Assembly (NCBI RefSeq): GCF_001194135.2
Contig: NC_068986.1
Span: forward strand, 85,244,342-85,308,341
DNA: 64,000 nt
Direction: 5' to 3'
From: Octopus bimaculoides
Taxonomy: Eukaryota
Position 1 is the stretch's first letter, and each line of letters opens with the position of its first letter. The notes beneath the pieces were generated by a model. That model worked only from the letters and a program-made list of their open reading frames with translations. It did not search any database and was not told where the DNA came from. Positions 26,003 to 43,835 of this stretch are shown in pieces. The translations under genes and the position numbers were made by a program.

Positions 26003-26049
26003 ATAATGATGATGATGATGATAGTAATAATAATAATAAGAATTATTAT

Positions 26050-26965: not shown

Positions 26966-26984
26966 TTTCTATTATGATTATTAA

Positions 26985-27036
<52 letters not shown>

Positions 27037-27038
27037 GT

Positions 27039-27320
27039 TCAGTAGTTTTATTTTTATAACGTGCTTTCACTTCACTACCGAGCGCAGCTCTGTGCGCCTT
27101 GGGTATGTGCTGTGGTTTGCTGTGGTGCTCTTATGTTTACTGTATTGAAAGTGTTTTGCGTAAGATGTGTGCAGTGCCCAGTAGTGCAATTTTCTGTATG
27201 TTATATATATTTGTAAGTCCTGGTGTTTTTGTTATGTATTTGTCTGAATATTTTTGTATTATACCTAAGGCACCTACTATAATAGGAATTGTTTCTGTTT
27301 TTAGATTCATTCATATGTTT
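27039..27320 (-). mobile_element. R4/Dong-like LINE 3' end (young subfamily), running into a gap
   Basis: KTETIPIIVGALGIIQKYSDKYITKTPGLTNIYNIQKIALLGTAHILRKTLSIQ plus 3'UTR, ending in (AAT)n. Confidence 0.88.
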
Positions 27321-27750
27321 NNNNNNNNNNNNNNNNNNNNNNNNNNNNNNNNNNNNNNNNNNNNNNNNNNNNNNNNNNNNNNNNNNNNNNNNNNNNNNNN
27401 NNNNNNNNNNNNNNNNNNNNNNNNNNNNNNNNNNNNNNNNNNNNNNNNNNNNNNNNNNNNNNNNNNNNNNNNNNNNNNNNNNNNNNNNNNNNNNNNNNNN
27501 NNNNNNNNNNNNNNNNNNNNNNNNNNNNNNNNNNNNNNNNNNNNNNNNNNNNNNNNNNNNNNNNNNNNNNNNNNNNNNNNNNNNNNNNNNNNNNNNNNNN
27601 NNNNNNNNNNNNNNNNNNNNNNNNNNNNNNNNNNNNNNNNNNNNNNNNNNNNNNNNNNNNNNNNNNNNNNNNNNNNNNNNNNNNNNNNNNNNNNNNNNNN
27701 NNNNNNNNNNNNNNNNNNNNNNNNNNNNNNNNNNNNNNNNNNNNNNNNNN

Positions 27751-27804
<54 letters not shown>

Positions 27805-27806
<2 letters not shown>

Positions 27807-29087
27807 GTTTATGTTTGACTTTTGCTTTGCATTTGTACAAGTTGGCTCCAAGTCTCACCCAGAGACCTCAAGAGACAAAAAGTTCATGTTAGTGTTATGC
27901 CTAGGGTGTCATATATTTGGTTTTGCACATAGTATTGTTCTAGAGAATTTTAAGACAGCATAAGAAAATTGTGTGTTTGTTTTAAAATTTGAGATTACGT
28001 AGATATTATTTTACGTAGGATATGGGCAGTTTCCATGAGCATTATCTTTTGAATTTCTGCCATTTTGGGATTTCCTGGTATCTGAGCTAAGTAGCAATCA
28101 GCACCTTTTGCTATCGTTCCTAGGGCACTTATGACAACAAATATTGTTTTATTCTTCAGGTTCCACATTTTGTTAATTCCAATTTCAAGGTCTTTATACT
28201 TGCCCAGTTTTTGGTAGGTCTTGACAGATATGTTTATACTGATTGGGACAGTCATATCAATGAGGAGGGATGATTTCTGTCTGAAGTCCTTCAATATAAT
28301 GTCTGGCCTATTTGTATCTATCTTTCTGTCAGTTTGAATGGTGAAGTTCCAGAGGAGTGAAATGTGATTATTTTCATGCACAGGAGGTGGCTTGTGTACC
28401 CACCAGTTTTTATCATGGCGCAAGTCCAGGTTTTTGCATATTGTGCAGCTCTATCATGCCTCTTGAGATACTCTGTAGGCGCAAGGAAACTGTACATGGA
28501 GACAACATGATCAATAGTTTCATTTTGTTGTTGACACACACGACATATTAGGGAGCTACCATTCTTTAATATGTTGGCCTTGTAGTTCCTTGTAGGTAGG
28601 CATTGATCTTGGGCTGATATAATAAACCTTTCCGTTTCTGATTTTAAGCCAGAAGCCATTAGCCATTGATGGGTAAGGGCTTTGTCAACATCGGCATTAT
28701 AGGCTCTTTTTGACTTTTTGGCATTGAGATGTTTTTCTTGCCATTTATCAGTCAGAATATCTAAGGCAGCAATTTTAGCACGGGTTTTCAAGCGCTTAGC
28801 TTTTCTGCGCTTGTTTCTTGTACGTCTAATTCTAGAATTTGTTGCATTTGGAATTCACTTATATATTCCTTTGCCTGCTTTGTTTCTGAGTATGATGCTT
28901 TCTTGTTTTCATGTTTTGAGACAAGGTTTAACATCCAGTCCTCAGAGCTTTTCAGGTAGATGTCTAGACCAATTGTGGCAATCTTCATTGTTAATGCCAG
29001 TTGTAAAAGTCCATGTCCTCCCTCTTTTCTTGGCAGATAAAGTCATTCTATATCTGCCTATATTATTATTATTATTATTATTATTAC

Positions 29088-29147
<60 letters not shown>

Positions 29148-29250
29148 CAATGTTGTTGGTGTTGGTGTTGAGAAGAAACTGCTTGCCCGCAACTACTTTG
29201 TTGATTTCTTTCAAAATATTGATATCACTTCTGTGTAATGGAACCAAGTA
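27805..29250 (-). mobile_element. R4/Dong-like (RLE) LINE fragment, about 1.3 kb
   Basis: LYLPRKE (thumb), LTHQWLMASGLKSETERFIISAQDQCLPTRNY, CRVCQQQNETIDHVVS, LLWNFTIQTDRKIDTNRPDIILKD..LLIDMTVP, QKLGKYKDLEI. Homology is clear to about 29060; the extension beyond the (ATT)n tract to 29250 is tentative. Confidence 0.9.
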
Positions 29251-29800
29251 TAGAGGGAGAGAATAAATCTATTTAGAATTTTTCCTCCGACCTGAAGTGA
29301 AAAAATTAAGAGGTATTTTTAAGAAATCACTTATTTGGTTTCACTTTTAACGCGCAACAGAAATGTGAAGAAGTTATAGAGACAACGCCCCCTCAGAGAA
29401 ACCTAGGTAACTACAGTGAGAACAAACAAAAGGAATAGACAACACAAAGCAGTTGATTGTGTGGATACTAAAAAGAATCTCATTTGGCGACACTTTAAGC
29501 AATAATAACATTTACACGCCTACTGCACGCCTACATAAACATTTTCAAATCACAAATACAGTAATTCTATATTTTTTATGATAACAATTTAAGGAGAAGG
29601 CAATTATCGTCATTTACCATAGCGACTGCAATTGATAAACATTGGATATGATATTTGGATAAAAGAAAGAAGACCAGGCATCATTACGGTATTAAATAAA
29701 TGGGTAAGATTTTATCCGAAACTGTCACAGAGTTGTGAAAGCGAAATAAAATACATTTTACCCCAGTGTTACTTTGATGACATGCACTGCTCGCTCACCC

Positions 29801-29844
<44 letters not shown>

Positions 29845-29845
<1 letters not shown>

Positions 29846-30640
29846 GAATAAGTGATCAAACGCATAAAAGGACAAGAATGAAATACAAAGAAAGCACTTC
29901 AGACAGATTGAAGAGAAACCTCTGCATGACCAATTTTGGAGAACCACTGAGGACGTATGGGCTTGGTTAAAAAAAGGGTAATTAAAAAAAGAAACAAAGG
30001 TTATAATTGTAGCAGCTAAAAACCAAGCAATGAAATAAACAACTTGAGAAAAAATATATGGAGAGGTGTGTCAGAAAAATGCAGAGCTTGTGGAACTTGG
30101 AACGAGACAGTAGCACACATTGTGACAGAATGCACCAAGTTGGCACAGGAAGAATATAAGAAATGAAGGCACGACCAGGTTGTAAGAGCATTACGCTGGA
30201 AACTGTCAGAAATGATGATTTGAAGCCGGAAATACATGATGCAATCGAGTTGAAATAGTATTGGAATCGGAGAAACGTAAGATTTTGTGGGGCTTTCCTC
30301 TTCAAACGGACAGGAAGTTAGAAAATTACAGACCGAACATAACAATTATAGATTAGGAAATGATGTTGACTAATCGACCCATCATGCCTGTTTGATTTCA
30401 GGATCTTAAAGAAAGAGGACGAAAAACAAAAACAGAAAAAATAATGTATATAATCCCTTAAAATTTTAAATAGGAAGAAGTTGGTGAATGAGATCAGTGA
30501 AAGTCGGCTTATGATTAGTGTGTTGGGAACAGTAAGCAAAGATATAGACAAATGGGCTAAGGAGATTGAAACAGAATGTCCTACACAGCAAAGATTATCA
30601 GGAGGGTTCTAAGCAGTTGAAATAAAGCTGAAAAACTGTG
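29845..30640 (+). mobile_element. Decayed R4/Dong-like LINE fragment
   Basis: Starts right after (TAA)n. EKPLHDQFW..WAWLKKG; KCRACGTWNETVAHIVTECTKLAQEEYK..RHDQV; QTDRKLENYRP. Confidence 0.85.
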
Positions 30641-30694
30641 GATACTTAAGGTTACAGGTAATAAGATGGGCTACAGCAAATATTCTGCTTAATA

Positions 30695-31070
30695 GCACAG
30701 ATTTGCTTGTCAGTTGTTTGACCTTAACCAGTTGAGCATGTCCCTTGGTGGCTGACGATATGTGCACCTCTGATCATGAACAGAAGTAGTGGGGGAGCAT
30801 CATAGCCATGTGTTGAGGGGAATTCTTTGGGAATTGAATAATTCACCTTTGGAAACATGGGTGTTTTGTTCAACATCCTTAAACAAACCTTATTCAGGGA
30901 CCTTTTGAACGGGATGGGCTACTCGACCTGAAGAAAATTCTAAGTGGGCCCAACCTGCGAGGTCATGCGCTGTTTATCTTGATATGAGATCACCATGTCA
31001 CGCACATATGGTTGTGATGTATGTGCCTGGTGTATCAGACGAGTAGTCATGATGGGTATATTGGGCTTCC
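30695..31070. repeat. Probable interspersed repeat (SINE-like, unclassified)
   Basis: GC-richer non-coding island between two LINE fragments, resembling recalled octopus repeat sequence (gggatgggctactcgacctg). No second copy in this window. Confidence 0.35.
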
Positions 31071-31128
31071 TATATTTTACCCCGTGTCACTTTGATGGCT
31101 TGCACTGCTCTCTCACTCAATAATAATG

Positions 31129-31223
<95 letters not shown>

Positions 31224-32213
31224 TGCAGGAGATGCAGAGGTAGCAAAGACCAATTATTGTTAAACAAAATAGTAATGCAAGATTGTAAACGGAGGAGGAC
31301 AAATTTGAGAATTGCTTGGATTGATTATCGCAAAGCTTATGATTCTATATTAGTCGGGTGGAAAACTGAGCTGACATCCTACGGACAAAGCTTAAGCACC
31401 CTGGGTATCAGAAAACGGATTTTCCAAGGCGATAACTTATCTCAGTTACTTTTTATTGTCTGTATGATCCCTCTAACTTTGATACTTACGAAAATGAACC
31501 TGAGATATCAGCTTAAGAGAAAGTTTCAAACACTCAGCCACCCCCTATTCATGAATGATTTGAAGCTTTATGGCAAGAATGAGGTACAAGTGAGTTTTTT
31601 GGAGAGCACGGTCCGCTGTTTTAGTGTTGATATTAGAATGGAATTCGGACTCAAGAAGTGTGGTATAATGTACCCGAAAAGAGGCAAGGTGCAGCCCTTA
31701 GCAGGGATAAAATTATCTAATACAGAACTGAATAAACAGATTAAAAAGGAAGGCTACAAATATCTAGGCATACTTGAGTTCAACGAAATCATGGAGAAAT
31801 GAAGGAACAACTGAGGATGGAATGTTTCTGAAGACTAAGATTGATGTTGCGCTCAAAATTGACCGGATGGGATAACATCCAAGCTGTTAATACATGGGCG
31901 ATAGCATCACTTCGGTATAGAACTGGAATAAAAAAACCGACAAAAGAAAGAACTGGTGATTATGGATACGAAGACAAGAAAAATATTGACAGTGTACGGA
32001 GCCTTCCACCCTAAGAGTGACACCGATAGGCTGTACTTGTCCAGAAGGAAGGGTGGGAGAAGTTTGATTAGTTTCCAGAATTGTATCGAAGCAGAGAAAA
32101 ACAGCTTAGAGTGGTATGTAAGAAATACCGTGGAACCATTGTTGAGACATGTGAAGAAGTCCTGCGTCATCAAAATTGATAATTATTTAACGAAAGAAAG
32201 ACTTAAAGAAAAG

Positions 32214-32260
<47 letters not shown>

Positions 32261-32320
32261 CAGAAAAAAAAGAAACGGTATGGAAGGAGGAAAATATGTA
32301 CATTGCTTTTTTCGGTCTCA
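31224..32320 (+). mobile_element. R4/Dong-like LINE reverse-transcriptase fragment
   Basis: Starts right after (TAA)n. GSKDQLLLNK..AWIDYRKAYDS, RIFQGDNLSQLLF..MIPL, HPLFMNDLKLYGK, MEFGLKKC, YKYLGI, GAFHPKSDTDRLYLSRRKGGR. Confidence 0.9.
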
Positions 32321-32347
32321 TTTAAAGTATGACTATCTTTAATGGAG

Positions 32348-32552
32348 TCTGAGGCCAACAGCTAGGAGATACAGCCACTACAGCTATCAAATTTTGGAGT
32401 TAATTGTCTGAATTGTTAAATAATACTTTCTTATGGTGACCTTTTAATTATTTTTAGTAGTACAGTGGTATAGTGTATAGCATCAATTCAGACATTGAAC
32501 TCCAGCAACTGATGGCTGTAGTGGCTATACCCGCTGACCTGTTTGCTTCAGA
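32348..32552. mobile_element. MITE-like element with about 68-bp imperfect terminal inverted repeats
   Basis: 32348-32415 (tctgaggccaacag...agccactacagc...gtctgaattg) pairs with 32484-32552 (caattcagac...gctgtagtggct...ctgtttgcttcaga). Confidence 0.75.
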
Positions 32553-33229
32553 TTTCATTGAAGATAGTCATGCCTTAAATGAGATCGAACAAAGAATGTG
32601 CTACCCATCCTTGACATCTGCCGACTGAATAGCAAAATAAGTCCAACATCACCACACACACCTCCATCCCCATATAACTACCATTTCTTCCTTTCTTTCC
32701 ACGACCTTCCCCTCTTCCTCACCAAATACGCACAGACATGCCCATATAACTCAATCAACCAACTTATTGCTCAAAAGGGATAATCAACCCTCAGTTATAC
32801 ATCCGTTAATGTTATATCACCTGAAGAAATGAATCCATGAAGAGGATCTACCCGATGCCCACGGATACGACGGACTACACTAACCATTCTAAGAATACGG
32901 ACTGTGATCTTAAGGAACATGTGATTTGTGGAAACGCGCGTAGCGATGCATCAAAATATTTATAAATTCTATCGAATGATTATTGTTATTATTACTATAT
33001 TTATCCTACATTATATCGGTACAGCTCGATATAATGCATTCTTACTTTTGTGAAACAGGTGACGTGTGTGTTTATGTGTTCACATAGATCTATATGTATA
33101 TGCACATTTGTTAATGGATATGTAAATACATATAAAAGACATGTTTTGTACGAATAGGTACTTATTTTATCTGATGAAACGCATTTTTATGTAACTAAAA
33201 TATATTCTCTCGTATTTTCACCTTTTCAG

Positions 33230-33487
33230 GCGGCTCCGTTATTTGAAACCTTATAAGAAGTTTCATTCTGCTTATATGTATAACAATTACATGTATATTC
33301 TTGCCGGTTACATAGCTGAAATATTAACTGGTCAAAGCTGGAAAGAACTAGTTCAGCAGCGAATATTCAAGCCGCTTGCCATGGCCTCATCTGTCTTTGC
33401 TGACGACGTTTTAGACTGGAGAAAATTTGCTCTTCCTTATGTTTCCATAAATGATGAACTTATTCCTTTAAACACTACACTCCTCAA
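33230..33487 (+). CDS. Internal exon of serine beta-lactamase/PBP-like (class C/AmpC-like) protein; carries the YxN motif
   Basis: Acceptor ttttcaccttttcag ends 33229; donor gtaagt starts 33488. Translates (x)RLRYLKPYKKFHSAYMYNNYMYILAGYIAEILTGQSWKELVQQRIFKPLAMASSVF...LNTTLL(K). YNN..Y.LAG.I.E..TG.SW..L...IF.PL.M is the typical beta-lactamase-fold signature. Phase 2 at both ends. Confidence 0.9.
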
Positions 33488-34449
33488 GTAAGTATTGATT
33501 TCCTTTTCGAAATACATATATTTTTATTAATATTTAGAGAAAGCAACTTATCAAAAAGTTTGATAAGTGCCAACGCTCGAAATTCTCGGCCCTTGAGTCA
33601 ATCTGGCGCTTCTGCTAAATATTAATAAAAATATACATATACTCATATTCTATTTTTCCTGCTACACATATACGTATACATACGTATGCGCACACACATA
33701 CACTCACATATACATATATATACATACGTACATACATGTATAAATATATACATGCATATATATACATATATATACATACGTACATACANNNNNNNNNNNN
33801 NNNNNNNNNNNNNNNNNNNNNNNNNNNNNNNNNNNNNNNNNNNNNNNNNNNNNNNNNNNNNNNNNNNNNNNNNNNNNNNNNNNNNNNNNNNNNNNNNNNN
33901 NNNNNNNNNNNNNNNNNNNNNNNNNNNNNNNNNNNNNNNNNNNNNNNNNNNNNNNNNNNNNNNNNNNNNNNNNNNNNNNNNNNNNNNNNNNNNNNNNNNN
34001 NNNNNNNNNNNNNCTTTTCGAAATACATATATTTTTATTAATATTTAGAGAAAGCAACTTATCAAAAAGTTTGATAAGTGCCAACGCTCGAAATTCTCGG
34101 CCCTTGAGTCAATCTGGCGCTTCTGCTAAATATTAATAAAAATATACATATACTCATATTCTATTTTTCCTGCTACACATATACGTATACATACGTATGC
34201 GCACACACATACACACTCGCAAATATTTTCCGAACGGCCATAAATTCCACCAGCTGTTCAGCCAAATTTACAATAAATAGAGCAAACGTTGCTTGAAAAA
34301 AAATTCTAGTACTAAGGTAAACCACAATTAAATATTTTTCAAACATATGCAGGAAGAGGAAAGTCGATATGAAATTTTCTAAAATATAAGCTTTTGCTCA
34401 TTAAAGGCCTAATGAATAGAGAAAAACAGTGTACAGACAGCTAATATCT

Positions 34450-35220
34450 GAACCAACATTGCATAAAGTAGTTTACATTGGGCTGGCAGAGCATTACTCC
34501 AAAAAGCATTTGAATTAGTACACGATCACATTTTGCCGTCACCGTCTGAAGAATACTACAACACTTTCAGAGAGGTTTTAAAAATTGAGAGACAAAGCAG
34601 TAACCACCGACAGGTTAAGGACAATAGCGGATAAAACTGACATTTTAGAAAGGTTTAAAGTATTATACCTAACCTCTGTTTCTCAGAAAAATGCCATATT
34701 ACCCATGGTTCTACTCATAAGAAATGGGTAGAAGATCTTTTTGCTGATGTATGGCAGACGACATCTGATTTCTTTTCCATCCTTTGAGCATCTACGGTCG
34801 ACTGAAGTGCTGATTGTGAGAAACCATGAATCTCTTATGTACTCATTTTTGTGCCATAGAAATTAAAATATATTAGACTCTACTCACTTCCAGCAAAAAG
34901 CTGTATTCATAAATGTAATGTGTTTGTATCACAGAATTAACTAAAACAATATTCATTTAGTACCGTACAATAGCGGTACTTTATTCATGTAGACGTAATG
35001 CGCATAATGTAATACTATCAATGAAAGTCTACTTCAAAGTACGAACGGAAAGTATTAGAAGATACATGAAATTGGAGACCTACTTGCATTAGATCAACGA
35101 TAACATTACTGTTCAGGAGCAAATTTAATCAAGATTCATATTCGGAAATTCCTACCTCTTCATGAAGAACTAGATTCACTCGAAAGCAGACTTCTTGGTG
35201 CAATACAGAATATAGCAGTT
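34450..35220 (+). mobile_element. Possible very decayed DNA-transposon (Mutator-like) remnant
   Basis: Only weak fragmentary similarity (FTLGWQS; ttttccatcctttgagcatct ~ FP..WA; tgtgagaaaccat ~ CE..H). No intact frame. Confidence 0.2.
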
Positions 35221-35331
35221 AACGAAAGAAAGCTCGCTTCTTCCTTTTTTTTTTTTTTCAATATAATTTGAAATCGGATTAGAAAGAAACATAATGAAAT
35301 TTTTCAGAAACCAATTAATATTTTCAGACAA

Positions 35332-35478
35332 GAAGGCGGCGAACTGGTAGAATTTTTAGCTCGCCAGGCGAAATGATCAGTCATATTTCGTCCATTTTCA
35401 CGTTTTGAGTTCAAATTCTGCAGAGGTCAACTTTGCCTTTCGTTCTTTCGAGGTCGAAAAAATAAGTTCCAGTTAAAT
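35332..35478 (+). mobile_element. 3'-truncated SINE family B copy
   Basis: aaggcggcgaactggtagaat...gagttcaaattctgcagaggtcaactttgcctttc...gtcgaaaaaataagttccag. Confidence 0.75.
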
Positions 35479-35479
35479 A

Positions 35480-38400
35480 CTCTCTCAAACACACGCTCAC
35501 ACACAGACACCCACAGGAACACAAGCCCACTCCTACCCGCATCAGGGAAGGATTACACAGACTCTGATTCTTACACATACCGAAGTGAGGATGAGGAGGA
35601 ACAGAAAAACCCAAAACAACTAAAAAGAAAGCGCAGTAGGAAAACATCCGGATTGACACCAACACAAAAGTAGGACAACAAAAAAATACAATCATACAGT
35701 CAACCCTCCCCCCCAGCTCAGCAACCGATTACACAGCAAAAGCTCCCACCACCAATACAACCAACACCAGCACAACCCCGCCGCGTCTCCAAAAGACAGC
35801 TTTCGGAAGAATTGTTAAATTCTCAGACCCCGAATTTTGTGCTAGTGAGAAGAGCAAATAAAGATCTCATGGCCCTTATAGCTCAAAATAGATTGACCAA
35901 TTCGTGACACCAGCACCATTAAAGTGCCAGAAGACTTAGTGTTAGTGCGTATGGCACAGACAAGAACATTCGGGAGGTTTTCCCAACACAACTTGGGAAC
36001 CCCTAATATAACAGTTTCCAAAACACTTTTAAAGGGGTTTCCAGAGAAACTCCAGCTAGAAGCGGATGCCAGGCCTCCAGGCAGCCAATATCACTGGCAG
36101 AGTAAGTAAGTAAGCTCTTTTTCTTTCTTACAGCTTTTCCGACCGGCATGGAATTGATTAGAGTGGGCTGTGTAAACGTTCGTGGCCTGAGGTCACCCTG
36201 AAAGTAGGGACGCCTGCTCAACAACCTCAGATTACTATCTATGGCTGTGACAGCCGTCAGCGAAACCAGGATTTCCGACACACGCGATCTGGCCCCCATT
36301 TTCGACGATTTTGAGATCTACGCATCTCTTAGTTGACCTGGAATGGGAGTGGGGTGGTAGGGCTGTTAGGAAAGGCCTGGATCTCGAGGTACGGACGATC
36401 TTCTATGACCCGGAAGGTAAGTTAGTGATCCTGGATGTGAGTAACAGCAAAGGTGATGATTTCAGACTAGTTGCTGTGTACGCCTCAACTGGGGCGGGGA
36501 AGCCAGATTTCATTAGACGTTTGGCGGTCTTCCTTGGGACGTCTCTCTCTTTAGTTATAGTTGGCGATTGGAACGCCATTTCGGATGCACGCCTGGATGG
36601 AGTGGGGCTATCCAATAGGAGAGGAGGGTGTAAAAGCCTTACAAACCTGACAGGTACCGACTAGATTTCCTGAATGCGCCAACATGGATATGAGCAAACA
36701 GCACCGGGTCTTTCTGATCGTATTTAGATATGATATTCTGTAGACCAGTTAGCAAAAGTAGCATAGGTTCCCCACAGTTCAAAGTCATCGGCTATAGAGA
36801 CCACAAATTTGTGATCTGCACGGCCGACCTAGATAAGATCCATAGGTAGGGCTCCGGGTACTAGAAACTGAACGCGTCTTTCTCAGTACGTCAAGCATTC
36901 AGAAACCGGGTTATCAAGTTAGTCGATCGGAAGTTGGCGGACGCAATCGTCAACAACCGTCCGTGGATAGGCCTGAAAATAGTTATTTGATTAGATACTG
37001 TAGGATTTAGTAAAGAAATAGATTTATAGGAATCTGGGATAGAGAGACAGGTAGGTAAGAAGCTAGAGGAGGCACTTAGGAGTGGCACTGCGACTGACGT
37101 GATGGCGGCGAGATTGGCTCTAAATTAATTCTTCAGGGCCAAGCGCGAAGGTTGGCAACTGCTGTAAGACATGAGCAGACGAAAGACGTTCGATGGACCC
37201 GGGTTACAGAGGTCCAAGGTGACGACAAAGCCACAATTTGGTTTTTGACGAGCCGGGGCGGGCGCATGCTACATAAATCCAAGCAGGTATATACGGAATA
37301 TCAGAGGCACTACGTCGAACTTTTCGGGGCACGCGGTGTGTCGAGAATGGAAGTGGATTTCACGTCTTACCTCGACGGCATGCCACGCCTTTCGGCTAGA
37401 GCTGCGGAGTTCTGCGGAATGCCGATAACAGCCGAAGACATACCGGACACGATGATGAGCTGCACAAGGGGCTTGATGGTCTGCCCTTCGAGTTTTATGT
37501 TCATATGACAGATTTATTCAGTGATATCTCAGCTGATCTCCAGCACAACTGGCAGCAGAACGGGAGAATACCCAGTGCTGTGGGCCGTGGCATGGTGGTT
37601 CTGCTGAGAATGGACGCGGACAAAGGGGACTAAATACATAAGTTTAGGTCCATAACTCTTCTGAACGCAGATTGTTAGATTTTGGTCAAGGTGTTAGCCA
37701 AGAGGTTGGCGCTTGTCGATAAGCTGATCGGGGACGCCCAGACATGCACTATCCTGAACAGATCTATCCACGACAAACTCCACCTCACGTGCTATATCAT
37801 AGAGGGGGTAAGGAAGGATTCTCATATGGATCAATTTGGATCAATCAAAAGCTTTTGACAGGGTCGACCATCAATACTTAGAATCTGTTCCCGTGGCGAG
37901 AATATTTGGACCATCAATGCTTGGAGTCTGGAGTCTGTTCTAGCTTCGGTCCCGTTTTCAGAGGCTGGATCGCTGTAATGTACAGCGACATCTATACGGT
38001 GTTCCAAGTAAACGGCCATCTTGTGGAGTCGTTTAGCATCACTCGCTCGGCACGTCAAGAATGCCCACTCTTACCATTTCTGTACGTGCTGGCTCTCGGG
38101 GAAATTCTGGGCGTTGGGAGGGATAAATTAACTAGTCTTTTCTGGAGAACTTTCGGGTCGGGGCCTATGGATAACTTCCAGAAATCCCTGGCCTGACAGT
38201 GTTACCGGGAAGCTCTACCGGTTCGAGACAAGCTCTACAGACACGGAAGTGCTGTCAGACAGACCTGTCAGAGGTGTGCGCAGGGCGGTGAAACCGTCCT
38301 GCATGCACTCGTCCAGTGTCCATGCATTACTGACTTGTGGAGCTTTGTCGAACAGCTGTTGTCACGTGTAGGGCGGATCCGGTTATCAGCCGAGTCCATC

Positions 38401-38950
38401 GTGAACATTGCCCCGGCGCCTTCCTTTGGCCAGGAAGGAGAGGCAGTTTTCCTCTATCTGGTGGCCAAGGTGAAGGAGGTAGTAAGATGGACGACACTGA
38501 AAAGATTGAAGGCAGGTACTTTCCTCTTCGGCCAAGCCCTCATCGACTTTTTCAAGTCCCAGTTGAAAAGGAAAGTGAGAGTAGAGAGGGAAGTTCTGCC
38601 TCCCAATATTTTTGTTGAAAGGTAGGTGAATGTGGCGAGGATGGCCCGAGTGAATAGGCCTACTCTGAACTTTCGTTTGTAAACCAGAGAAGTTGAGAAT
38701 AAGAGAGGTACCTGCTGGGGTACATCTGCTCGGGATAACAAGAATGTGTGAGGTTCCTCGGTCGTCCCTGTGAGGAACTTATCCCTTTTGGTGGGATTTT
38801 ATTATTTAATTGTTTTTTGCTATTTATTGTATACACGGCATTGTTCAACACTTCACTTTTACCTTGTATATTTATCGTTTCTATTTGTTTTGTGTTCGGC
38901 CTTTGTAGGCAATAAAGGAAAGTATTATTATTATTATCATTATTATTAAT
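35480..38950 (+). mobile_element. Decayed L1/Tx1-like LINE (APE endonuclease, RT, zf-RVT) inside an intron
   Basis: MELIRVGCVNVRGLRSP from 36148 and VIVGDWNA (APE endonuclease); FRSITLLNA..ILVKVLAKRLAL and DQSKAFDRVDHQY (RT); SFSITRSARQECPLLPFLYVLAL; TCQRCAQGGETVLHALVQC (zf-RVT). AATAAA at 38911 then a (TTA)n tail. Many frameshifts, and the YADD region is deleted near 38100. The 5' boundary (ORF1-like charged stretch) is approximate. Confidence 0.85.
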
Positions 38951-38952
38951 TA

Positions 38953-39180
38953 AGGCGGCCATCTGGCAGAATCGTTAGCACGCCGGGCAAAATGCTTAGC
39001 GACATTTCGTACGTCTTTACGTTCTGAGTTCAAACTCCACCAAGGTCGATTTAGCCTTTCATCATTTCGGGTTCGATAAATTAAGTAGCAGTAAAACTCT
39101 GCGGTCAGTGTGATCGACTTACCCCCTCTCCACGAATTCCAGGCGTTGTGCCTATAGTAGAAAGGATTATTATTATTATT
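38953..39180 (+). mobile_element. SINE family B copy with (ATT)n tail
   Basis: aaggcggccatctggcagaatcgttagcacgccgggc...gtgcctatagtagaaaggattattatt. Confidence 0.85.
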
Positions 39181-39319
39181 TTGTTAGTTTGACATAATCA
39201 GTAAAGTGCCCTATTTTTTACGCATTCAATTTGAAAAACAACTACATTTGAGTTTTATAGAAATGGCAGTAAAATAATATTGAAAATAATCAATCCTAAC
39301 ATTAACTTCACAGTGACAC

Positions 39320-39514
39320 CATCACCACCACCACCACCACCACCACCACCACCACTGCTACCACCACCACCACTGTTATCACCACCACTGTTACCACCAC
39401 CACTGCTANNNNNNNNNNACCACCACCACCATCACCACCACCACCACCAAAACCAAAACCACCACCACCACCAACAACAACAACACTACTACTACTACTA
39501 CTACTACTACTACA

Positions 39515-39543
<29 letters not shown>
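39320..39543. repeat. Compound (CAC)n/(CAA)n/(TAC)n microsatellite abutting a splice acceptor
   Basis: Directly visible; ends about 6 nt before the exon start at 39550. Confidence 0.95.
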
Positions 39544-39545
<2 letters not shown>

Positions 39546-39549
39546 TCAG

Positions 39550-39809
39550 ATCACTTGGACCAGCAGGGCCATCCGGTACCATATGCTCCAATTCAATAGA
39601 TATGCAGAAATGGCTCCAGTTTCAGCTAAACGGGGGTTTGGACATGAGAGGTCATCGGCTTGTGAGCCAGAAAGAGTTCCAGGAATTACATACGCCTCAG
39701 ATACCAACACCTATGCCTCTGGGTCGGAAACTACTGAAGCAACCTGCCTTTCCCATATCTGAAGGGCGGTTTGCTTATGATTTAGGCTGGAGCTCAGGAA
39801 TATACAGAG
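39550..39809 (+). CDS. Internal exon of beta-lactamase-like protein
   Basis: Acceptor tttcag ends 39549; donor gtgaat starts 39810. AA from the previous exon plus A completes Lys, then SLGPAGPSGTICSNSIDMQKWLQFQLNGG...ELHTPQ...AYDLGWSSGIYR(G). Matches the family pattern 'PAG.I.S...DM.KWL.F.L' and 'YxLGW'. Phase 2 in, phase 1 out. Confidence 0.88.
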
Positions 39810-42629
39810 GTGAATATTCTAAACACAACGACGCACTTAGTCCTCAACATATCGTTTGATATGTTGTAGTTTTTTTGTTGTAATTTTGGTAGATTTTATG
39901 GTTGTTATTCTTATTGGTGTTGCTGCTATCATTGTTGCTATTGTTGTTGTTGCTGTAGCTGTTAACATTGTCGTTGCTGATGTATTATTGATGTTATTTA
40001 AATCTAGATCATTCCTAATCACGACTATGAGGAGGAGCATTTCAGCTTCCTTCCCCCAATATCCCGTTTTTTTTTCTCCATCATTATTATGTTCTCGTGT
40101 AATCATCAATGTATTTCTTCCCTTTTCAAGTCAATGGGGCGTCACATGAGGGAGAGAGCAACTATATGGAAGATTCCTAGCGGATTAGTTGCTGATATTC
40201 TCGTTTTGTAGACATGATTAGAGTATAATTGTGGTAATACTGATTAGTGGGTTGCAGATAACCAGATAGGTAAATCAGCGGACATCCACTTTTGGAGTCA
40301 CAGTTTCGTATCATATTACAAGCAACGTATGCAACCCGTGTTTAAATCTACTTTTCAATAAAGTCACTTTAGCTTGTATGAAACTATGACAACGAATGTC
40401 ATGTATGCGACATGCTTCACGGCATGACAAATTTACTAGTGTTTCTTTGATTTACATTCCTGGTACCAATTTCAGTTTTGTCTACATTTGCAGATATATT
40501 TTGAATTGGAAAGACTATAAAGATGTAATATTAGTTTCACTCTAGATCGCAACAGGTCTGGGTAGTATGAAGAACCAGCTGTTGCCAAATGTAAGGCAAA
40601 GTGAATACCAGAACATTTTCGCCCAGCTTTATTACAGAAATTGCTGATTGCAAATATGAATAACAGAGAATTGTATTAGAGATTGCATCCATCTTTATAT
40701 TTAAACGAATGGTTTACTCGCCAAATCTTGTGGGTGTAAGCTCAATGCAAAAGATTTAGGATTAAATCTTTTCTTCTTTTAGCTGGTCACAAAAATAGCA
40801 TTTCCATTTTTCACATGAAAAGAAGTTTGGCATTGAACTGGCAACCATATATATGAAAGCTTGTGGTGGCGATATTTTAGAGTAGGAATGATTATTAATT
40901 AAGTAGAGAATGCAGCTCACTGATTTTCCTGTTGCTTCCTTTGAACATTTGTAGTTCGACGAATGCTGAAAAAATGAGAAGAGGAGGAATTCCAGAATGT
41001 AGAAATTTAGGGGAGATCAAAACTCAAACCTTAGTTTTGTTGAGTCAGGAATAGAACTAAAATATTTGCTATCCTCAAAATATAGAAACCTTGTTCTTGT
41101 GGAACAACTTTAGCGATACTGCTGAATCAGTGAAGCCACTATAAGGGGACGCAAACGTTTGAAAAGCCTACTAACTGCAGCGACAGTTTAAGGCAGAACG
41201 AACAACAATATCATTTTCATAGAAGTGTTTCAATCTTCAGTGGTCAAACTGAATTTCGAACACCAGGCTATCAATGATCTGAATGCACCTGCAGATACCA
41301 CAGCCGCTAAATCATTTCTTCTACCATGACTAATGTGAGAATAAGTAATTAGTTGTTTCTGATAAATCCTTCCCTTAAATTTCTATAAATTTCCCACGAA
41401 CTCTTTAGTTTTATCCATAGATATAAGCCGAAGCGTAAATATATAACAATAGAACCAAGGGATTATCTGGGAAGGTACTGTGAATAGTCTTTGTTAGTCT
41501 TAGATATTTTAACTCTACGTTTAAACAGTTTTTTTCTTCTTTTTTATGAGATTCAATAACTTCAGTTAAGATCGAAGTAATATGAAAGTAGTTCATAAAT
41601 TCTTTACTGTACTGTATGCCCCAACTTGGCGGTGAGATGGTTCACGCGTAACATAAGGGAGATAACTCTTGCATGTGTTCATTTGGAGTGTTCTTGGCAT
41701 CTTTGAAGTAGAAATTAAAATGAGCTCAAAGTAAGTTAAAATGGAATTGAAATATATTAAATGAACCTCGAAGCAAATTAAATAGATGTTATTTAGAAAA
41801 TATATAGTAGGTATTTGTAATATGAATTGTTTGAACTTACGCAGATTCGTTCTAAATCGGATTTATTTAAATTTAAACCTATAATGCTGCATTTATATAT
41901 GGACGACAACAGTCTGTCTCAAAGCAAAGTTGGATTTTCTCAAGCTACAAGTACCAATATTTTCCAAGGTACCAAATAAGAAATTCCGCCCTTGAATCTT
42001 GTCTGTGTCTATTATCTACCACGTAACACAATCTGGGATCCATAAATGCTTCAAGAAGGGCTAAAAAGATAAAGCCATATAATAGGATACACAGAGACAG
42101 TGCCTCACATCTGTACACTGTACGTGCTCAGAGCAAATTGAAAGAGGTAGAATATGAATATGTTGAGTCACTTCTTGAATGTCTAAAGGAATACCCGCAA
42201 TTAACATTGAATGAACACTGAAAATGCTTGCATTCAACAAGGATTAATTATTTTCTAAAGAAGTATAAGTTAACTTTATGGGTGAATGGTTTTATTTAAA
42301 CAAATGTATTTATAACCAGAATTGTTTTTTTTTCTTTTTTCTTTTTTGTATTTCAAAACTGATTAACTTACAAAAGATGTTTCTGTTCTAGTTTTAGAAG
42401 TTATGCAAATCAAAACTAAACTGTTATTTATTACTCTTTAGCTAAAAGCATTAGAAATATGATTTCATGGCAGTATTTTATTTGGAAATATATTCAAAGT
42501 TTTTGTTTTTCAAAATTATTTTAATTTATATCGAGTTTATTTTAAATTGGTTCGAAATTTCGTTTGAAGAGTGTGACATCAATTGAACAACTACAAATGT
42601 TTTATTGTGTTTAATAAATATATGTATAT

Positions 42630-42689
<60 letters not shown>

Positions 42690-42996
42690 ATGTTTCTGTG
42701 TTTTTGAATGTTTCTCGTTGTAAAGTATCTACATTTTAAACTATTCTCGAGCTTTTTGTACATGAGAAAAGTATCATTTGCTTGGGTTTTAGGACTCTTT
42801 CTTGATATAAAATATTTGAGAATATATGAACAGATTTCTTTTAAATTGTACCATTCCCTAATTATAAATCCTGAAACTTGGGATTCTTAATCGCTTTAGA
42901 AAATACTAGACGATGAATAGGTTCCGTTTTACGGAATAATGTTTCGAGTGCAGTGATTTATATAGAACATTCATAATTTTATTGTGTATTTTCTAG

Positions 42997-43835
42997 GTTT
43001 CCATAACGTCCAGCACAACGGCAGGATATTTGGATATGATTCCTTAATATGGTTATTCCCAGACAATAACGTGGCGATATTCAGCAGTGTTAACGGTCCA
43101 ATGAACGCACATTCTAAGAATGCATTAAGAGTCATACATCACTACGCCGCAGATTTGCTGCTTGGACAAGAAGCTTGGCTCAATCAATCCAGTTCGTGCA
43201 CATTTCCAGATCCTTGGTTACACAATTATAATAAAACAAAACACAGGAAAACATCCGGTCGGGTTATGGTTGCACAGAAATCATCTTCCCTAGAAAAGAA
43301 TGGCGCCGAGGCATTCCACCGTCGGTGGAGATCAAAGCAGCATAAGAAAAAAAATCGGTTTCCCGACTTACAGAGGTATCAGCGGCCCCTGTCAGAGTAT
43401 GTTGGTATTTATGGACATCCTGCTTTTGGTAACATTACTATTTATTTGAACTCATCCACACAACAACTCTACCTGGCACACGGCAAATTTGGGCAAGGTA
43501 TTCTTCTACCAACTAATAAAATTGATAAATTTCATATGAGATTCCAAGGACTACTACGATACATGAGCGAAGCAGATGGTTGGGACATGGAGTTTCCAAT
43601 TATTTTTCAAAGTGCAAAAGACGATTCTAGTAAAATAGACTTTCTTTATGCCCACTTCATCGAGAAAACCGTTCCACCGTTGTTTCAACGTGGCGCTTCC
43701 TGGCAGGATTTTGTCCCTTCGCCGTCTTACCCAAACGCAAAGTTCTGTCCCAACAATTTGTCACGTTTGATACCAGCTTGTTCTGTCATATCTATCGTTT
43801 TGTCTTTGTTGCCTGTTTTAATTATATTTTTCTAA
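42997..43835 (+). CDS. Terminal coding exon of beta-lactamase-like protein: HxG motif, DUF3471-like domain, hydrophobic C-terminal tail
   Basis: Acceptor gtattttctag ends 42996; phase matches the previous exon (G+GT=Gly). Translates GFHNVQHNGRIFGYDSLIWLFPDNNVAIFSSVNG (HNG at the KTG/HTG-box position), later EYVGIYGHPAFGNITIY (DUF3471-like), ending SVISIVLSLLPVLIIFF-stop. Longest gap-free ORF in the track. Confidence 0.92.

What the first reader, a model, noticed from the sequence alone, without database searches (positions are those of the whole stretch)
33230..43835. Intron-containing, probably cell-surface beta-lactamase/PBP-like enzyme in an animal (likely cephalopod) genome
Seen: three exons with canonical splice sites and consistent phases (2/2/1) join into 451 aa with YNN (YxN motif), HNG (KTG/HTG-box position), a DUF3471-like YxGxYxHPxxG segment and several N-glycosylation sequons (NTT, NQS, NKT, NIT, NSS, NLS). 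Established: beta-lactamase plus DUF3471 is an architecture known mainly from bacterial and fungal serine hydrolases; animal LACTB is mitochondrial and lacks it; the oyster shell protein Gigasin-6 has a beta-lactamase domain. Inference: this is a poorly characterised secreted or membrane-anchored D-amino-acid peptidase/esterase-type enzyme. It could act on bacterial peptidoglycan or microbial metabolites (symbiont management or defence), and may descend from an ancient horizontal transfer that later gained introns. Substrate and origin cannot be determined from sequence.
Basis: partly seen in the sequence, partly recalled or inferred. Interest (0 to 1): 0.72.

Follow-up and report, generated by a model that had tools for sequence, protein, structure and literature searches.

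The report
Octopus surface beta-lactamase-fold hydrolase gene
The region holds the last three exons of an already annotated but unstudied Octopus bimaculoides gene for a probably cell-surface, penicillin-binding-protein-like serine hydrolase, which belongs to an old family shared by many invertebrate phyla and is not a recent bacterial import.

Summary
Window 33230-33487, 39550-39809 and 42997-43835 splice (GT/AG, phases 2/2/1) into 451 aa. These are 100% identical to the C-terminal part of NCBI 'uncharacterized protein LOC106868112' (Octopus bimaculoides, 624 aa). Both N gaps are intronic. Exons 1 and 2, which carry the signal peptide and the SxxK motif (S96-L-T-K99), lie 32 kb and 2.8 kb upstream of the window. 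The protein has an intact beta-lactamase/S12 catalytic domain (SxxK, YxN, HxG), a diverged DUF3471 (lipocalin-like) domain, conserved N-glycosylation sequons and a GPI-signal-like C-terminal tail. Its best structural matches are Pab87 and IS11.

The architecture is not mainly bacterial or fungal: at least 90 animal clusters carry it, from molluscs (including 'gigasin-6-like' and 'protein flp'), annelids, nemerteans, brachiopods, priapulids, a millipede, a tardigrade, a hemichordate and amphioxus. The four introns sit at identical alignment columns and phases in nine genes from six phyla. The gene structure is therefore at least as old as the bilaterian ancestor, so recent transfer is excluded and a pre-bilaterian bacterial origin stays open. 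Octopus vulgaris keeps all exons (dN/dS 0.34). Substrate is unknown. This is an ordinary, uncharacterised member of a known kind.

The parts
1..33229 (+). 3' part of intron 2 of LOC106868112 (the intron is about 36 kb; exon 2 ends 2.8 kb upstream of window position 1). It is filled with microsatellites, assembly gaps and decayed retroelement fragments.
   Evidence: Exact spliced mapping of P0001 on L001 places exon 2 at L001 39328-39501 and exon 3 at L001 75571. The window offset is 42341. tblastn finds no residues 1-173 in the window.
33230..33487 (+). Exon 3 (258 nt; third base of codon 173 to second base of codon 259). Encodes part of the all-helical subdomain, including the YxN motif.
   Evidence: AG acceptor and GT donor. 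100% match to P0001. 97.7% nt identity with Octopus vulgaris, with splice sites kept.
33279..33287 (+). Codons Y190-N191-N192: the YxN catalytic motif (motif 2 of S12/class C enzymes).
   Evidence: Read directly from the sequence. Y190 is nearly invariant and N192 invariant in a 43-sequence animal plus bacterial alignment.
33488..39549 (+). Intron 3 (phase 2). Contains both assembly gaps flagged by the scan (33789-34013, 39409-39418) and ORF fragments at 36311-38625 that look like mobile-element remains but gave no Pfam hit.
   Evidence: The same intron position and phase occur in nine animal genes.
33503..34214 (.). Exact 201-nt duplicate (33503-33703 = 34014-34214) flanking the 225-N gap. 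Most likely an assembly artefact; entirely intronic.
   Evidence: the repeat finder gives 100% identity. Both copies map to one interval of the gap-free O. vulgaris locus.
39550..39809 (+). Exon 4 (260 nt; third base of codon 259 to first base of codon 346).
   Evidence: AG/GT. Matches P0001. The exon is 260 nt in octopus, Owenia, Lineus and Solemya.
39810..42996 (+). Intron 4 (phase 1).
   Evidence: Same alignment column (371) and phase in all nine animal genes examined.
42997..43835 (+). Exon 5, coding part (codon 346 to the stop TAA at 43833-43835). Encodes the end of the catalytic domain, a basic linker, the DUF3471/lipocalin-like domain and the C-terminal hydrophobic tail.
   Evidence: 98.2% nt identity with O. 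vulgaris.
43014..43022 (+). Codons H352-N353-G354: the HxG motif in the place of KTG/HTG, on a predicted beta-strand (residues 347-356).
   Evidence: H352 and G354 are invariant in 43 sequences. DSSP of the AF2 model gives strand 347-356.
43233..43376 (+). Basic, low-confidence linker (about residues 425-472: KHRKTSG...RRWRSKQHKKKNRF). It is longer in the two cephalopod-type sequences than in Solemya or Owenia.
   Evidence: pLDDT 48-56 for residue blocks 431-470. Alignment gaps in Solemya and Owenia.
43380..43694 (+). DUF3471-like, lipocalin-type beta-barrel domain (about residues 474-578), starting with Y-V-G-I-Y-G-H-P-A-F-G (43398-43430).
   Evidence: Pfam PF11954 scores 20.2 bits, below the gathering score of 29.3. 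hhalign of animal against bacterial DUF3471 profiles gives 98.4% probability, E 8e-15. The model has eight predicted strands with pLDDT above 90. The best Foldseek hits are the two-domain proteins 2qmi and 7spn.
43767..43832 (+). C-terminal hydrophobic tail (residues 603-624, LIPACSVISIVLSLLPVLIIFF) with nothing after it, preceded by small residues (N598-N599-L-S601). This is a candidate GPI-attachment signal.
   Evidence: Kyte-Doolittle mean up to 3.0 over 15 residues, and the protein ends inside the hydrophobic stretch. The same kind of tail occurs in 48 of 71 full-length animal members. No GPI predictor was available, so this is inference.

Best explanation
Window 33230-43835 holds exons 3-5 of a five-exon, 76-kb Octopus bimaculoides gene (LOC106868112).

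Product. It is a 624-aa secretory-pathway glycoprotein made of:
- a signal-peptide-like leader;
- an S12/class-C-type beta-lactamase-fold catalytic domain;
- a basic flexible linker;
- a diverged DUF3471 domain with a lipocalin-like eight-stranded barrel;
- a C-terminal hydrophobic tail that is most likely exchanged for a GPI anchor.
The enzyme would therefore sit on the outer face of the cell membrane.

Mechanism (inferred from the family). Ser96 of S-L-T-K is acylated by the substrate. Lys99 and Tyr190 (Y-N-N) act as general base or proton shuttle. The H352-N-G354 strand lines the active site and oxyanion hole. The lipocalin-like domain closes over or extends the cleft and contributes to substrate binding, as in IS11 and Pab87.

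Substrate. The most likely class is short peptides or amides containing D-amino acids, such as peptidoglycan stem-peptide fragments. Hydrophobic esters are the second choice.

Evolution. The gene belongs to an old, vertically inherited bilaterian family that also contains the mollusc 'gigasin-6-like' and 'protein flp'-named proteins.

What is shown: gene structure, domain content, motif conservation, purifying selection, taxonomic spread and shared introns. What is inferred: surface location, GPI anchoring, catalytic competence and substrate.
For: - Gene model: the spliced product is 100% identical to P0001. Exact exon mapping with GT/AG at every junction. A 2112-nt Logan contig (run SRR27666065) carries an uninterrupted ORF for a 62%-identical orthologue. 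It is most simply a transcript, and it joins the same blocks without introns.
- Selection: the O. vulgaris locus keeps all five exons, all splice sites and an open frame. Amino-acid identity is 96.8% and dN/dS is 0.34 (0.24 for exons 3-5). Exons are 96-98.5% identical against 88-94% for intron sequence.
- Catalytic domain: Pfam PF00144 scores 153 bits, E 1.3e-44. The S-K-Y-N-H-G signature is intact in octopus and in 80 of 97 animal cluster representatives.
- Second domain: hhalign to bacterial DUF3471 gives 98.4% probability. The AF2 model has mean pLDDT 86 and pTM 0.84 with an eight-strand C-terminal barrel. Top Foldseek hits are Pab87 (2qmi, E 2.5e-26) and IS11 (7spn, E 1e-24), each aligned over about 565 columns. 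The same two proteins are the top sequence hits in the PDB.
- Function of relatives: Pab87 prefers D-Ala-pNA over L-Ala-pNA and removes the terminal D-Ala from a muropeptide (PMC2651629). IS11 is an esterase whose lipocalin domain covers the cleft (PMC9972953).
- Secretory and surface features: eight sequons. In the alignments, N88, N113 and N408 are kept in the four aligned animal proteins, and N491 is kept across the family. An N-terminal hydrophobic segment occurs in 63 of 71 full-length animal members and a terminal hydrophobic tail in 48 of 71. Oyster Gigasin-6 is an extracellular, heavily glycosylated protein (PMC9456362).
- Age: introns lie at alignment columns 123, 186, 283/284 and 371 with phases 2, 2, 2, 1 in nine genes from six phyla, including a hemichordate.
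Against: - No RNA-seq of Octopus bimaculoides itself was examined, so expression and the junctions in this species rest on the NCBI gene model, on conservation and on a probable orthologue transcript.
- No enzyme of the animal clade has ever been assayed. Gigasin-6 is known only as a shell-matrix and settlement-cue protein and has been suggested to be an 'inactivated' lactamase relative (PMC5854119).
- DUF3471 is below Pfam's own threshold in the octopus protein.
- GPI anchoring and the signal peptide were judged by hydropathy only, with no dedicated predictor.
- The two closest solved relatives disagree on chemistry (D-peptidase against esterase), and identity to them is only about 20%, so substrate cannot be transferred.
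- The relative orientation of the two domains in the model is uncertain. The rmsd is 10-15 A over the full-length alignments.
Confidence: 0.75

Rival explanations
1. The protein is a surface or secreted serine carboxylesterase or lipid-directed hydrolase (family-VIII-like), not a peptidase. The lipocalin-like barrel would bind the hydrophobic part of an ester or lipid substrate.
For: The best PDB sequence hit is IS11, a characterised carboxylesterase with the same two domains and a lipocalin lid. Family VIII esterases (4ivi, EstB 1ci8, Est-Y29, EH7) also match. Lipocalin barrels typically bind hydrophobic ligands (PMC9972953).
Against: Pab87, alkaline D-peptidase (4y7p), D-stereospecific hydrolase dHy1 (9s7k), DAP (1ei5), D-amino-acid amidase and R61 DD-peptidase match equally well or nearly so. 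Most characterised S12 enzymes are D-stereospecific peptidases (PMC2651629). Nothing in the sequence discriminates the two chemistries.
Confidence: 0.3
2. The protein is a non-catalytic binding or matrix protein: a dead-enzyme scaffold like that proposed for shell-matrix Gigasin-6, acting as a lectin-like, adhesion or signalling molecule.
For: The only experimentally handled family member, Gigasin-6, is known as a glycosylated shell-matrix component and larval settlement cue, and was suggested to be an inactivated lactamase relative. Seventeen of 97 animal cluster representatives have lost at least one catalytic residue, so non-catalytic members exist.
Against: The octopus protein and its closest orthologues (Solemya, Owenia, Lineus, Tubulanus) keep all six catalytic-signature residues, as does the Pecten 'gigasin-6-like' protein. 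D145, H149, N192, H352 and G354 are invariant from bacteria to octopus. Octopus has no mineralised shell matrix to build.
Confidence: 0.12
3. It is a recent horizontal transfer from bacteria into cephalopods, or bacterial contamination of the assembly.
For: After the animal proteins, the next-best matches are bacterial 'CubicO group peptidase' and serine hydrolases with PF00144 plus PF11954 at about 30% identity. A fungal homologue scores lower than the bacterial ones.
Against: The gene has four spliceosomal introns in a 76-kb gene on chromosome-scale records of two Octopus species. Intron positions and phases are identical in six phyla including a deuterostome. There are at least 90 animal clusters. 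Window GC is 36% with typical octopus repeats.
Confidence: 0.02
4. It is a decaying pseudogene or mis-predicted model.
For: The window is gap-rich, the N-terminal exons are absent from it, a decayed copy of exon 2 exists upstream, and the O. vulgaris annotation skips exon 2.
Against: The frame is open across all five exons in two species. dN/dS is 0.24-0.34. Exons are better conserved than introns and splice sites are conserved. O. vulgaris exon 2 is intact in the DNA, so the skipped exon is an annotation error rather than decay.
Confidence: 0.03

Closest known systems
Animal 'gigasin-6-like' / 'protein flp' / 'penicillin-binding protein 4-like' proteins (automatic NCBI names). Oyster shell-matrix protein Gigasin-6 is the only member with any experimental record.
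   Same: Same two-domain layout and size (about 550-630 aa). Same S-K-Y-N-H-G signature. The same four intron positions and phases in the nine genes of six phyla that were mapped. A leader plus C-terminal hydrophobic tail in most members. Identity to the octopus protein is 34-62%.
   Different: The octopus gene falls in a slowly evolving orthologue group with Solemya, Owenia, Lineus and Tubulanus (42-62% identity; NJ bootstrap 59%). This group is separate from the scallop and oyster gigasin-6-like group at 35-38%. Cephalopod-type sequences carry a longer basic linker. Octopus has no mineralised shell, so the shell-matrix role cannot apply.
Pab87 of Pyrococcus abyssi (PDB 2qmi), founder of the 'CubicO' S12 peptidases
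   Same: N-terminal penicillin-recognising serine-peptidase domain plus C-terminal lipocalin domain. Best Foldseek hit and second-best PDB sequence hit. Same three catalytic motifs.
   Different: Pab87 is a cytoplasmic archaeal homo-octamer with a central chamber. It has no signal peptide, glycosylation or membrane tail. Identity is about 21%. The octopus linker is about 50 residues longer. Oligomeric state here is unknown.
IS11 metagenomic thermophilic carboxylesterase (PDB 7spn)
   Same: Best PDB sequence hit (E 5e-22). Beta-lactamase-like domain plus lipocalin domain that covers the cleft. Ser/Lys/Tyr/Asn/His catalytic residues.
   Different: It is a bacterial, soluble dimer and a characterised esterase. 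Identity is about 20%. Its proline-rich lid strand was not examined in octopus.
Bacterial serine hydrolases with PF00144 + PF11954 (DUF3471), named 'CubicO group peptidase (beta-lactamase class C family)' in IMG
   Same: Closest non-animal relatives (up to 266 bits against the animal profile; 27-36% identity). Same domain order. The Y-x-G-x-Y-x-H-P-x-x-G start of the second domain is shared.
   Different: No introns. The DUF3471 domain is clearly above the Pfam threshold in the bacterial proteins (85 bits in P0009) but below it in octopus (20 bits). They lack the GPI-like tail architecture. Animal sequences fall on one side of an NJ split, with weak support.
LACTB (mitochondrial serine beta-lactamase-like protein) and the metazoan PBP-betaL lineages of Peitsaro et al. 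2008
   Same: Animal-encoded active-site-serine enzymes of the same superfamily that are thought to derive from bacterial PBPs (PMC2266909).
   Different: LACTB matches only residues 56-230 at 34 bits. It is mitochondrial, forms filaments and has no DUF3471/lipocalin domain.

Membership tests
Pfam Beta-lactamase PF00144 / MEROPS S12-type serine hydrolase fold | Profile match above the curated gathering score | tested here: met
   153.1 bits against a cut-off of 27 for P0001; 67.4 bits for the 451 aa encoded in the window.
Pfam Beta-lactamase PF00144 / MEROPS S12-type serine hydrolase fold | Three active-site motifs: SxxK, YxN, and (K/H)xG on the beta-3 strand | tested here: met
   S96-L-T-K99 (exon 1, outside the window), Y190-N-N192 and H352-N-G354, the last on a predicted strand.
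Pfam Beta-lactamase PF00144 / MEROPS S12-type serine hydrolase fold | Catalytic activity through an acyl-serine intermediate | not testable with these tools
   Needs recombinant protein and an S96A control.
DUF3471 (PF11954) / lipocalin-like C-terminal domain of Pab87-type enzymes | Profile match above the Pfam gathering score | tested here: not met
   20.2 bits against a cut-off of 29.3 (E 8e-4). The other close animal orthologues score 14.7-20 bits. Some animal members (Patella 'protein flp', P0155) do carry a precomputed PF11954 hit.
DUF3471 (PF11954) / lipocalin-like C-terminal domain of Pab87-type enzymes | Homology of the domain by profile-profile comparison, and an eight-stranded barrel fold | tested here: met
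   hhalign of 11 animal against 17 bacterial domains gives 98.4% probability and E 8e-15 over 75 columns. The AF2 model has eight strands between residues 482 and 577, with mean pLDDT of 90 or more in the 10-residue blocks covering 481-580. Full-length Foldseek alignments go to 2qmi and 7spn.
CubicO self-compartmentalising peptidases (Pab87 family in the strict sense) | Octameric cube with a central proteolytic chamber, and three CubicO-specific sequence motifs | not tested
   The oligomer was not modelled and the CubicO-specific motifs were not extracted from the paper. A glycosylated, membrane-tethered protein is unlikely to form the cytoplasmic cube, so I do not file it as CubicO (for the definition).
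Class C beta-lactamase (AmpC type) | NCBIfam bla_class_C equivalog score above the cut-off | tested here: not met
   58.1 bits against a cut-off of 415. D-aminopeptidase scores 51 against 443 and AmpH 47 against 266. All are far below threshold.
LACTB | Close full-length similarity to LACTB and a mitochondrial location | tested here: not met
   34 bits, residues 56-230 only. The octopus protein has secretory-type termini.
   Introns at alignment columns 123, 186, 283 and 371 with phases 2, 2, 2, 1, as in eight other animal genes. It falls on the animal side of the NJ split, although bootstrap support is only 12-30%.
GPI-anchored ectoenzymes | Cleavable N-terminal signal peptide, plus a C-terminal signal made of a small-residue omega site, a short spacer and a terminal hydrophobic stretch with no cytoplasmic tail | tested here: inconclusive
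   Hydropathy and inspection fit (N598/N599/S601, then LIPACSVISIVLSLLPVLIIFF at the very end). No SignalP, NetGPI or PredGPI was available and there is no experiment.

The most novel reading that the evidence does not exclude
Many bilaterian invertebrate phyla (none of the hits whose names I looked up was a vertebrate) carry an unrecognised GPI-anchored ectoenzyme. It would use a bacterial-type D-stereospecific S12 active site plus a lipocalin lid to trim peptidoglycan stem peptides or other D-amino-acid peptides at epithelial or haemocyte surfaces. This would be a branch of animal microbe-sensing or detoxifying chemistry distinct from PGRP amidases and lysozymes. Its shell-matrix and settlement-cue roles in bivalves would be secondary co-options.
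Probability: 0.15. Interest if true: 0.7.

Novelty: new member of a known kind. Interest (0 to 1): 0.3.

Why it matters
The gene is already in NCBI as an uncharacterised protein with a beta-lactamase-related domain, so its existence is not new.

The check adds four things:
- The protein belongs to a large family with conserved intron positions, found in at least nine invertebrate phyla.
- The family combines a PBP/beta-lactamase-fold active site with a lipocalin-like DUF3471 domain.
- Most members look like GPI-anchored surface glycoproteins.
- The catalytic residues are under conservation.

No member has been assayed for enzyme activity. If the family does act on D-amino-acid peptides, it would be a neglected piece of invertebrate host-microbe biochemistry. 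It would also give a function to the oyster shell protein Gigasin-6. For the genome scan, the practical lesson is that the 'bacterial-looking domain in an animal' signal here reflects old shared ancestry, not a transfer event.

Tried and rejected
1. Looked for the missing N-terminal exons in the window with tblastn at E up to 10. Only noise was found. The weak hits at 16863-16685 (-) and 61372-61464 (+) are full of stop codons. The exons lie upstream of the window.

2. Considered that an exon might hide in the gaps. Rejected, because the protein is continuous across junctions in all orthologues and the gap-free O. vulgaris intron holds no extra coding block.

3. Considered that the exon-2 copy upstream of the window could be a mutually exclusive alternative exon. 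Rejected. It lacks the first 30 nt of homology and an AG acceptor. It changes invariant H149 to R in O. bimaculoides and carries a stop in O. vulgaris.

4. Tried to settle bacterial against vertical origin with a neighbour-joining tree of 223 catalytic domains. Animals fall on one side of a split, but bootstrap support is only 12-30%. One Haliotis sequence and one EukProt transcript sit at the boundary. This is not decisive.

5. Scanned NCBIfam for a specific enzyme assignment. Everything is far below cut-off.

6. Searched the literature for DUF3471, cephalopod beta-lactamase-like genes and 'protein flp' in molluscs. Nothing specific was found.

7. Scanned Pfam with ten intronic and downstream ORFs. 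Only two weak retroelement hits appeared. No second gene was recognised in 43.8-64 kb.

8. AATAAA occurs 500 nt after the stop (44335), but the hexamer is common throughout this AT-rich window, so no poly(A) site is claimed.

Full report
OBSERVATION

The three proposed exons are real. Each is bounded by AG and GT, and the last ends in TAA at 43833-43835. The exons are window 33230-33487, 39550-39809 and 42997-43835. Spliced, they give 1357 nt whose frame 1 is open for 451 codons. That product is 100% identical over its whole length to the C-terminal 451 residues of P0001. P0001 is the NCBI protein 'uncharacterized protein LOC106868112 [Octopus bimaculoides]', 624 aa, called 'Beta-lactamase-related domain-containing protein' in UniRef. 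An exact protein-to-genome mapping that I wrote recovers the same boundaries on the chromosome record CM046606.1 (locus L001; window position = L001 position minus 42341).

YNN (Y190-N192), HNG (H352-G354), YVGIYGHPAFG (480-490) and the six listed sequons are all present. Pfam Beta-lactamase matches the 451 aa at E 1.6e-18. DUF3471 matches at 20.8 bits, below its gathering score of 29.3.

GAPS

The window has 17 runs of N. The two runs inside the finding (33789-34013 and 39409-39418) both lie in intron 3 (33488-39549).

The first gap is flanked by an exact 201-nt duplicate, 33503-33703 = 34014-34214. Both copies map to a single interval just after exon 3 in the gap-free Octopus vulgaris locus. 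This is most likely redundant contig ends, that is, an assembly artefact. The second gap sits in a (CCA)n/(CTA)n microsatellite directly upstream of the exon 4 acceptor and is colinear with O. vulgaris.

No exon touches an N. Orthologue alignments are continuous across the exon 3/4 junction. The gaps therefore have no bearing on the reading frame.

THE WHOLE GENE

The gene has five exons over 76 kb:
- Exon 1 (L001 10001-10344, residues 1-115) carries the hydrophobic leader and the SxxK motif, S96-L-T-K99.
- Exon 2 (L001 39328-39501) follows.
- Both lie upstream of the window, so window 1-33229 is the 3' part of the 36-kb intron 2.

This explains why tblastn finds no N-terminal residues in the window. 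In the gene model the motif is present, and the serine and lysine are nearly invariant in a 43-sequence alignment of animal and bacterial homologues.

IS IT A LIVE GENE?

The O. vulgaris locus (L012, no Ns) contains all five exons at 95.8-98.5% nucleotide identity without indels. Every AG/GT is preserved and the frame is open for 624 codons. Amino-acid identity is 96.8%. Nei-Gojobori dN/dS is 0.34 for the whole CDS and 0.24 for exons 3-5, and intron 4 is only 88-94% identical.

The deposited O. vulgaris protein (P0002, 566 aa) lacks exon 2 only because the annotation skipped it. A 2112-nt Logan contig from run SRR27666065 carries an uninterrupted ORF for a 631-aa, 62%-identical orthologue (P0003). 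It is most simply a transcript, and it shows the same blocks joined in an mRNA of a related animal. I did not see RNA evidence for O. bimaculoides itself.

WHAT THE PROTEIN IS

The full protein matches Pfam Beta-lactamase at 153 bits. It matches no specific NCBIfam enzyme family: class C beta-lactamase scores 58 bits against a cut-off of 415, D-aminopeptidase 51 against 443, and AmpH 47 against 266.

The best solved relatives by sequence are IS11 (7spn, E 5e-22) and Pab87 (2qmi, E 3.4e-21). Next come alkaline D-peptidase, a D-stereospecific hydrolase, Flp, ClbP, D-amino-acid amidase and AmpC enzymes. LACTB reaches only 34 bits over the N-terminal half.

An AlphaFold2 model built on a 43-sequence alignment has mean pLDDT 86 and pTM 0.84. 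It shows:
- a confident catalytic domain;
- a low-confidence basic linker (about residues 425-472);
- a confident eight-stranded C-terminal barrel (482-577);
- a terminal helix (603-623).

Foldseek against the PDB ranks Pab87 and IS11 first, each aligned over about 565 columns, that is, over both domains. It then ranks other PBP-fold proteins with a C-terminal barrel (Lip3, SurE), followed by single-domain D-peptidases, R61 and LACTB.

The C-terminal domain is below Pfam's threshold on its own. However, a profile of 11 animal domains aligns to a profile of 17 bacterial DUF3471 domains with 98.4% probability and E 8e-15.

Catalytic signature: S96, K99, Y190, N192, H352 and G354 are all present. 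The same six residues are kept in 80 of 97 animal cluster representatives and in 125 of 126 bacterial ones.

LOCATION

The N-terminus (MRTGVDHFLVPWCILATFGYSTP...) has a short charged start and a 13-residue hydrophobic core. The C-terminus ends in a 22-residue hydrophobic stretch with nothing after it. That stretch is preceded by small residues and a sequon, (C)PNNLS. This is the layout of a GPI-attachment signal rather than of a type I anchor, which normally has a cytoplasmic tail.

Among 71 full-length animal members, 63 have an N-terminal hydrophobic segment and 48 have such a terminal tail. The protein has eight N-x-S/T sequons. In the alignments, those at N88, N113 and N408 are kept in the four aligned animal proteins (P0001, P0003, P0004, P0005). 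The one at N491, inside the A-F-G-N-I/V-T/S motif, is kept across the family. Oyster Gigasin-6 is experimentally extracellular and heavily N- and O-glycosylated (PMC9456362).

Surface display through a GPI anchor is therefore the best reading. It rests on hydropathy and analogy only.

FAMILY AND AGE

A word-indexed profile search gave named animal homologues from:
- Octopus vulgaris, Solemya, Saccostrea, Ylistrum ('protein flp-like'), Pecten ('gigasin-6-like') and Argopecten;
- Owenia, Lineus and Tubulanus;
- Priapulus ('penicillin-binding protein 4-like'), a millipede and a tardigrade.
All of these came before the first bacterial hit.

An exhaustive HMMER search of 1.84 billion representatives found 3660 proteins at E 1e-30 or better. 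Name look-ups of 30 of the best 150 added Haliotis, Lymnaea, Elysia, Aplysia ('protein flp'), Patella, Nucella, Babylonia, Potamilus, the chiton Liolophura, Lingula, Helobdella and the hemichordate Saccoglossus. Bacterial entries (Deltaproteobacteria, Blastocatellia, Chlamydiales) appeared only further down the list. A search from the Saccoglossus protein added amphioxus ('gigasin-6-like', Branchiostoma belcheri) and a Patella 'protein flp' that does carry PF11954. No vertebrate was seen.

I mapped nine of these proteins exactly onto their genomic loci: octopus, Owenia, Lineus, Solemya, Argopecten, a millipede, Saccoglossus, Lingula and Haliotis. All have introns at the same alignment columns (123, 186, 283/284, 371) with phases 2, 2, 2, 1. 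Saccoglossus lacks only the first intron. Exon lengths are often identical too: 174, 258 and 260 nt. Such agreement across Mollusca, Annelida, Nemertea, Brachiopoda, Arthropoda and Hemichordata means the intron-bearing gene existed in the last common ancestor of protostomes and deuterostomes.

ORIGIN

A neighbour-joining tree of 223 catalytic domains puts the 96 sequences that include all named animals on one side of a split. A further Haliotis sequence and a EukProt transcript sit at the boundary. Bootstrap support is only 12-30%. The animal profile scores bacterial PF00144+PF11954 proteins (up to 266 bits) higher than a fungal one (124 bits). This fits the picture of Peitsaro et al. 2008, in which several metazoan PBP-like lineages each have their own bacterial relatives (PMC2266909). 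I cannot distinguish a very old transfer from vertical descent with loss. A transfer after the bilaterian ancestor is excluded.

HOW IT PROBABLY WORKS

By homology to S12 enzymes:
- Ser96 attacks the scissile carbonyl to form an acyl-enzyme.
- Lys99 and Tyr190 act as general base or proton shuttle, and Asn192 orients them.
- The H352-x-G354 strand borders the site.
- The lipocalin-like domain probably folds over the cleft and helps bind substrate, as described for IS11, or shapes access, as in Pab87.

Pab87 prefers D- over L-Ala-p-nitroanilide and trims the terminal D-Ala of a muropeptide. IS11 hydrolyses esters. Most characterised relatives in the hit list are D-stereospecific peptidases or amidases. 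I therefore rank a D-amino-acid peptide or amide substrate, such as peptidoglycan fragments, first (about 0.4), a hydrophobic ester second (about 0.3), and a non-catalytic role third (about 0.12). These are inferences; nothing in the sequence decides between them.

VERDICT

The claimed rarity in animals and the transfer-then-intron-gain story do not stand, except for a possible pre-bilaterian event.

The gene is already annotated. It is an uncharacterised member of a widespread invertebrate family related to Gigasin-6 and, more distantly, to Pab87-type S12 hydrolases. Interest is modest. The open question is biochemical: what a conserved, probably GPI-anchored, D-peptidase-like enzyme does on invertebrate cell surfaces.

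Noticed in passing
window 33503-33703 and 34014-34214 (flanking the gap 33789-34013): An exact 201-nt duplicate lies on both sides of the 225-N gap, starting 16 nt after the exon 3 donor. Both copies map to one interval in the gap-free O. vulgaris locus, so it looks like unmerged contig ends. After the second copy, O. bimaculoides resumes about 2.5 kb further along the O. vulgaris intron.
   Followed up: yes
L001 41064-41237 (about 1.1 kb upstream of window position 1) and L012 24526-24699: A decayed partial copy of exon 2 lies 1.6 kb downstream of the real exon 2, and it is present in both Octopus species. It is 78% identical to exon 2 at the nucleotide level and keeps the GT donor. It lacks an AG acceptor and changes invariant H149 to R. 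In O. vulgaris it has a stop codon. It is a pseudo-exon, not an alternative exon.
   Followed up: yes
L012 23394-23567 (Octopus vulgaris): The deposited O. vulgaris protein (P0002, 566 aa) lacks the 58 residues of exon 2. The exon is intact in the genome (97% identical, AG/GT kept). This is an annotation error in that record.
   Followed up: yes
window 31092-31802 (+) and 28318-28791 (-): Decayed retroelement fragments lie in intron 2. One ORF has a weak RVT_1 match (26 bits, below cut-off) and another a weak zf-RVT match (18 bits). ORFs at 36311-38625 in intron 3 and at 54419-54892 look like mobile-element remains but gave no Pfam hit.
   Followed up: partly
window 39320-39545: A long (CCA)n then (CTA)n trinucleotide array, interrupted by a 10-N gap, runs right up to the exon 4 acceptor (...ctactttcAG). 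A comparable repeat-rich stretch lies upstream of exon 4 in O. vulgaris.
   Followed up: partly
P0001 residues 425-472 (window 43233-43376); P0003 the equivalent linker: The cephalopod-type orthologues have an expanded, very basic, low-confidence linker between the catalytic and lipocalin-like domains, with RxxR/RxKR-like motifs (octopus RRWR; P0003 RHTKR). It might be a proprotein-convertase site that would free the catalytic domain from the anchored barrel. This is untested.
   Followed up: no
P0111 (Haliotis, 1052 aa), P0115 (Solemya, 985 aa), P0039 (tardigrade, 1103 aa): Some animal family members contain two tandem catalytic domains in one predicted protein. These are either real fusions or merged tandem genes. 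Several lineages (Owenia, Lineus, Tubulanus, Haliotis, Saccoglossus) have multiple paralogues, whereas only one Octopus bimaculoides protein was seen.
   Followed up: no
L007 (Saccoglossus kowalevskii): The hemichordate gene has lost intron 1 but keeps introns 2-4 at the conserved positions and phases.
   Followed up: yes
whole window: There are 17 assembly gaps in 64 kb, GC is 36%, and TA/CA/trinucleotide microsatellites are pervasive. No second protein-coding gene was recognised in the 20 kb downstream of the stop codon.
   Followed up: partly
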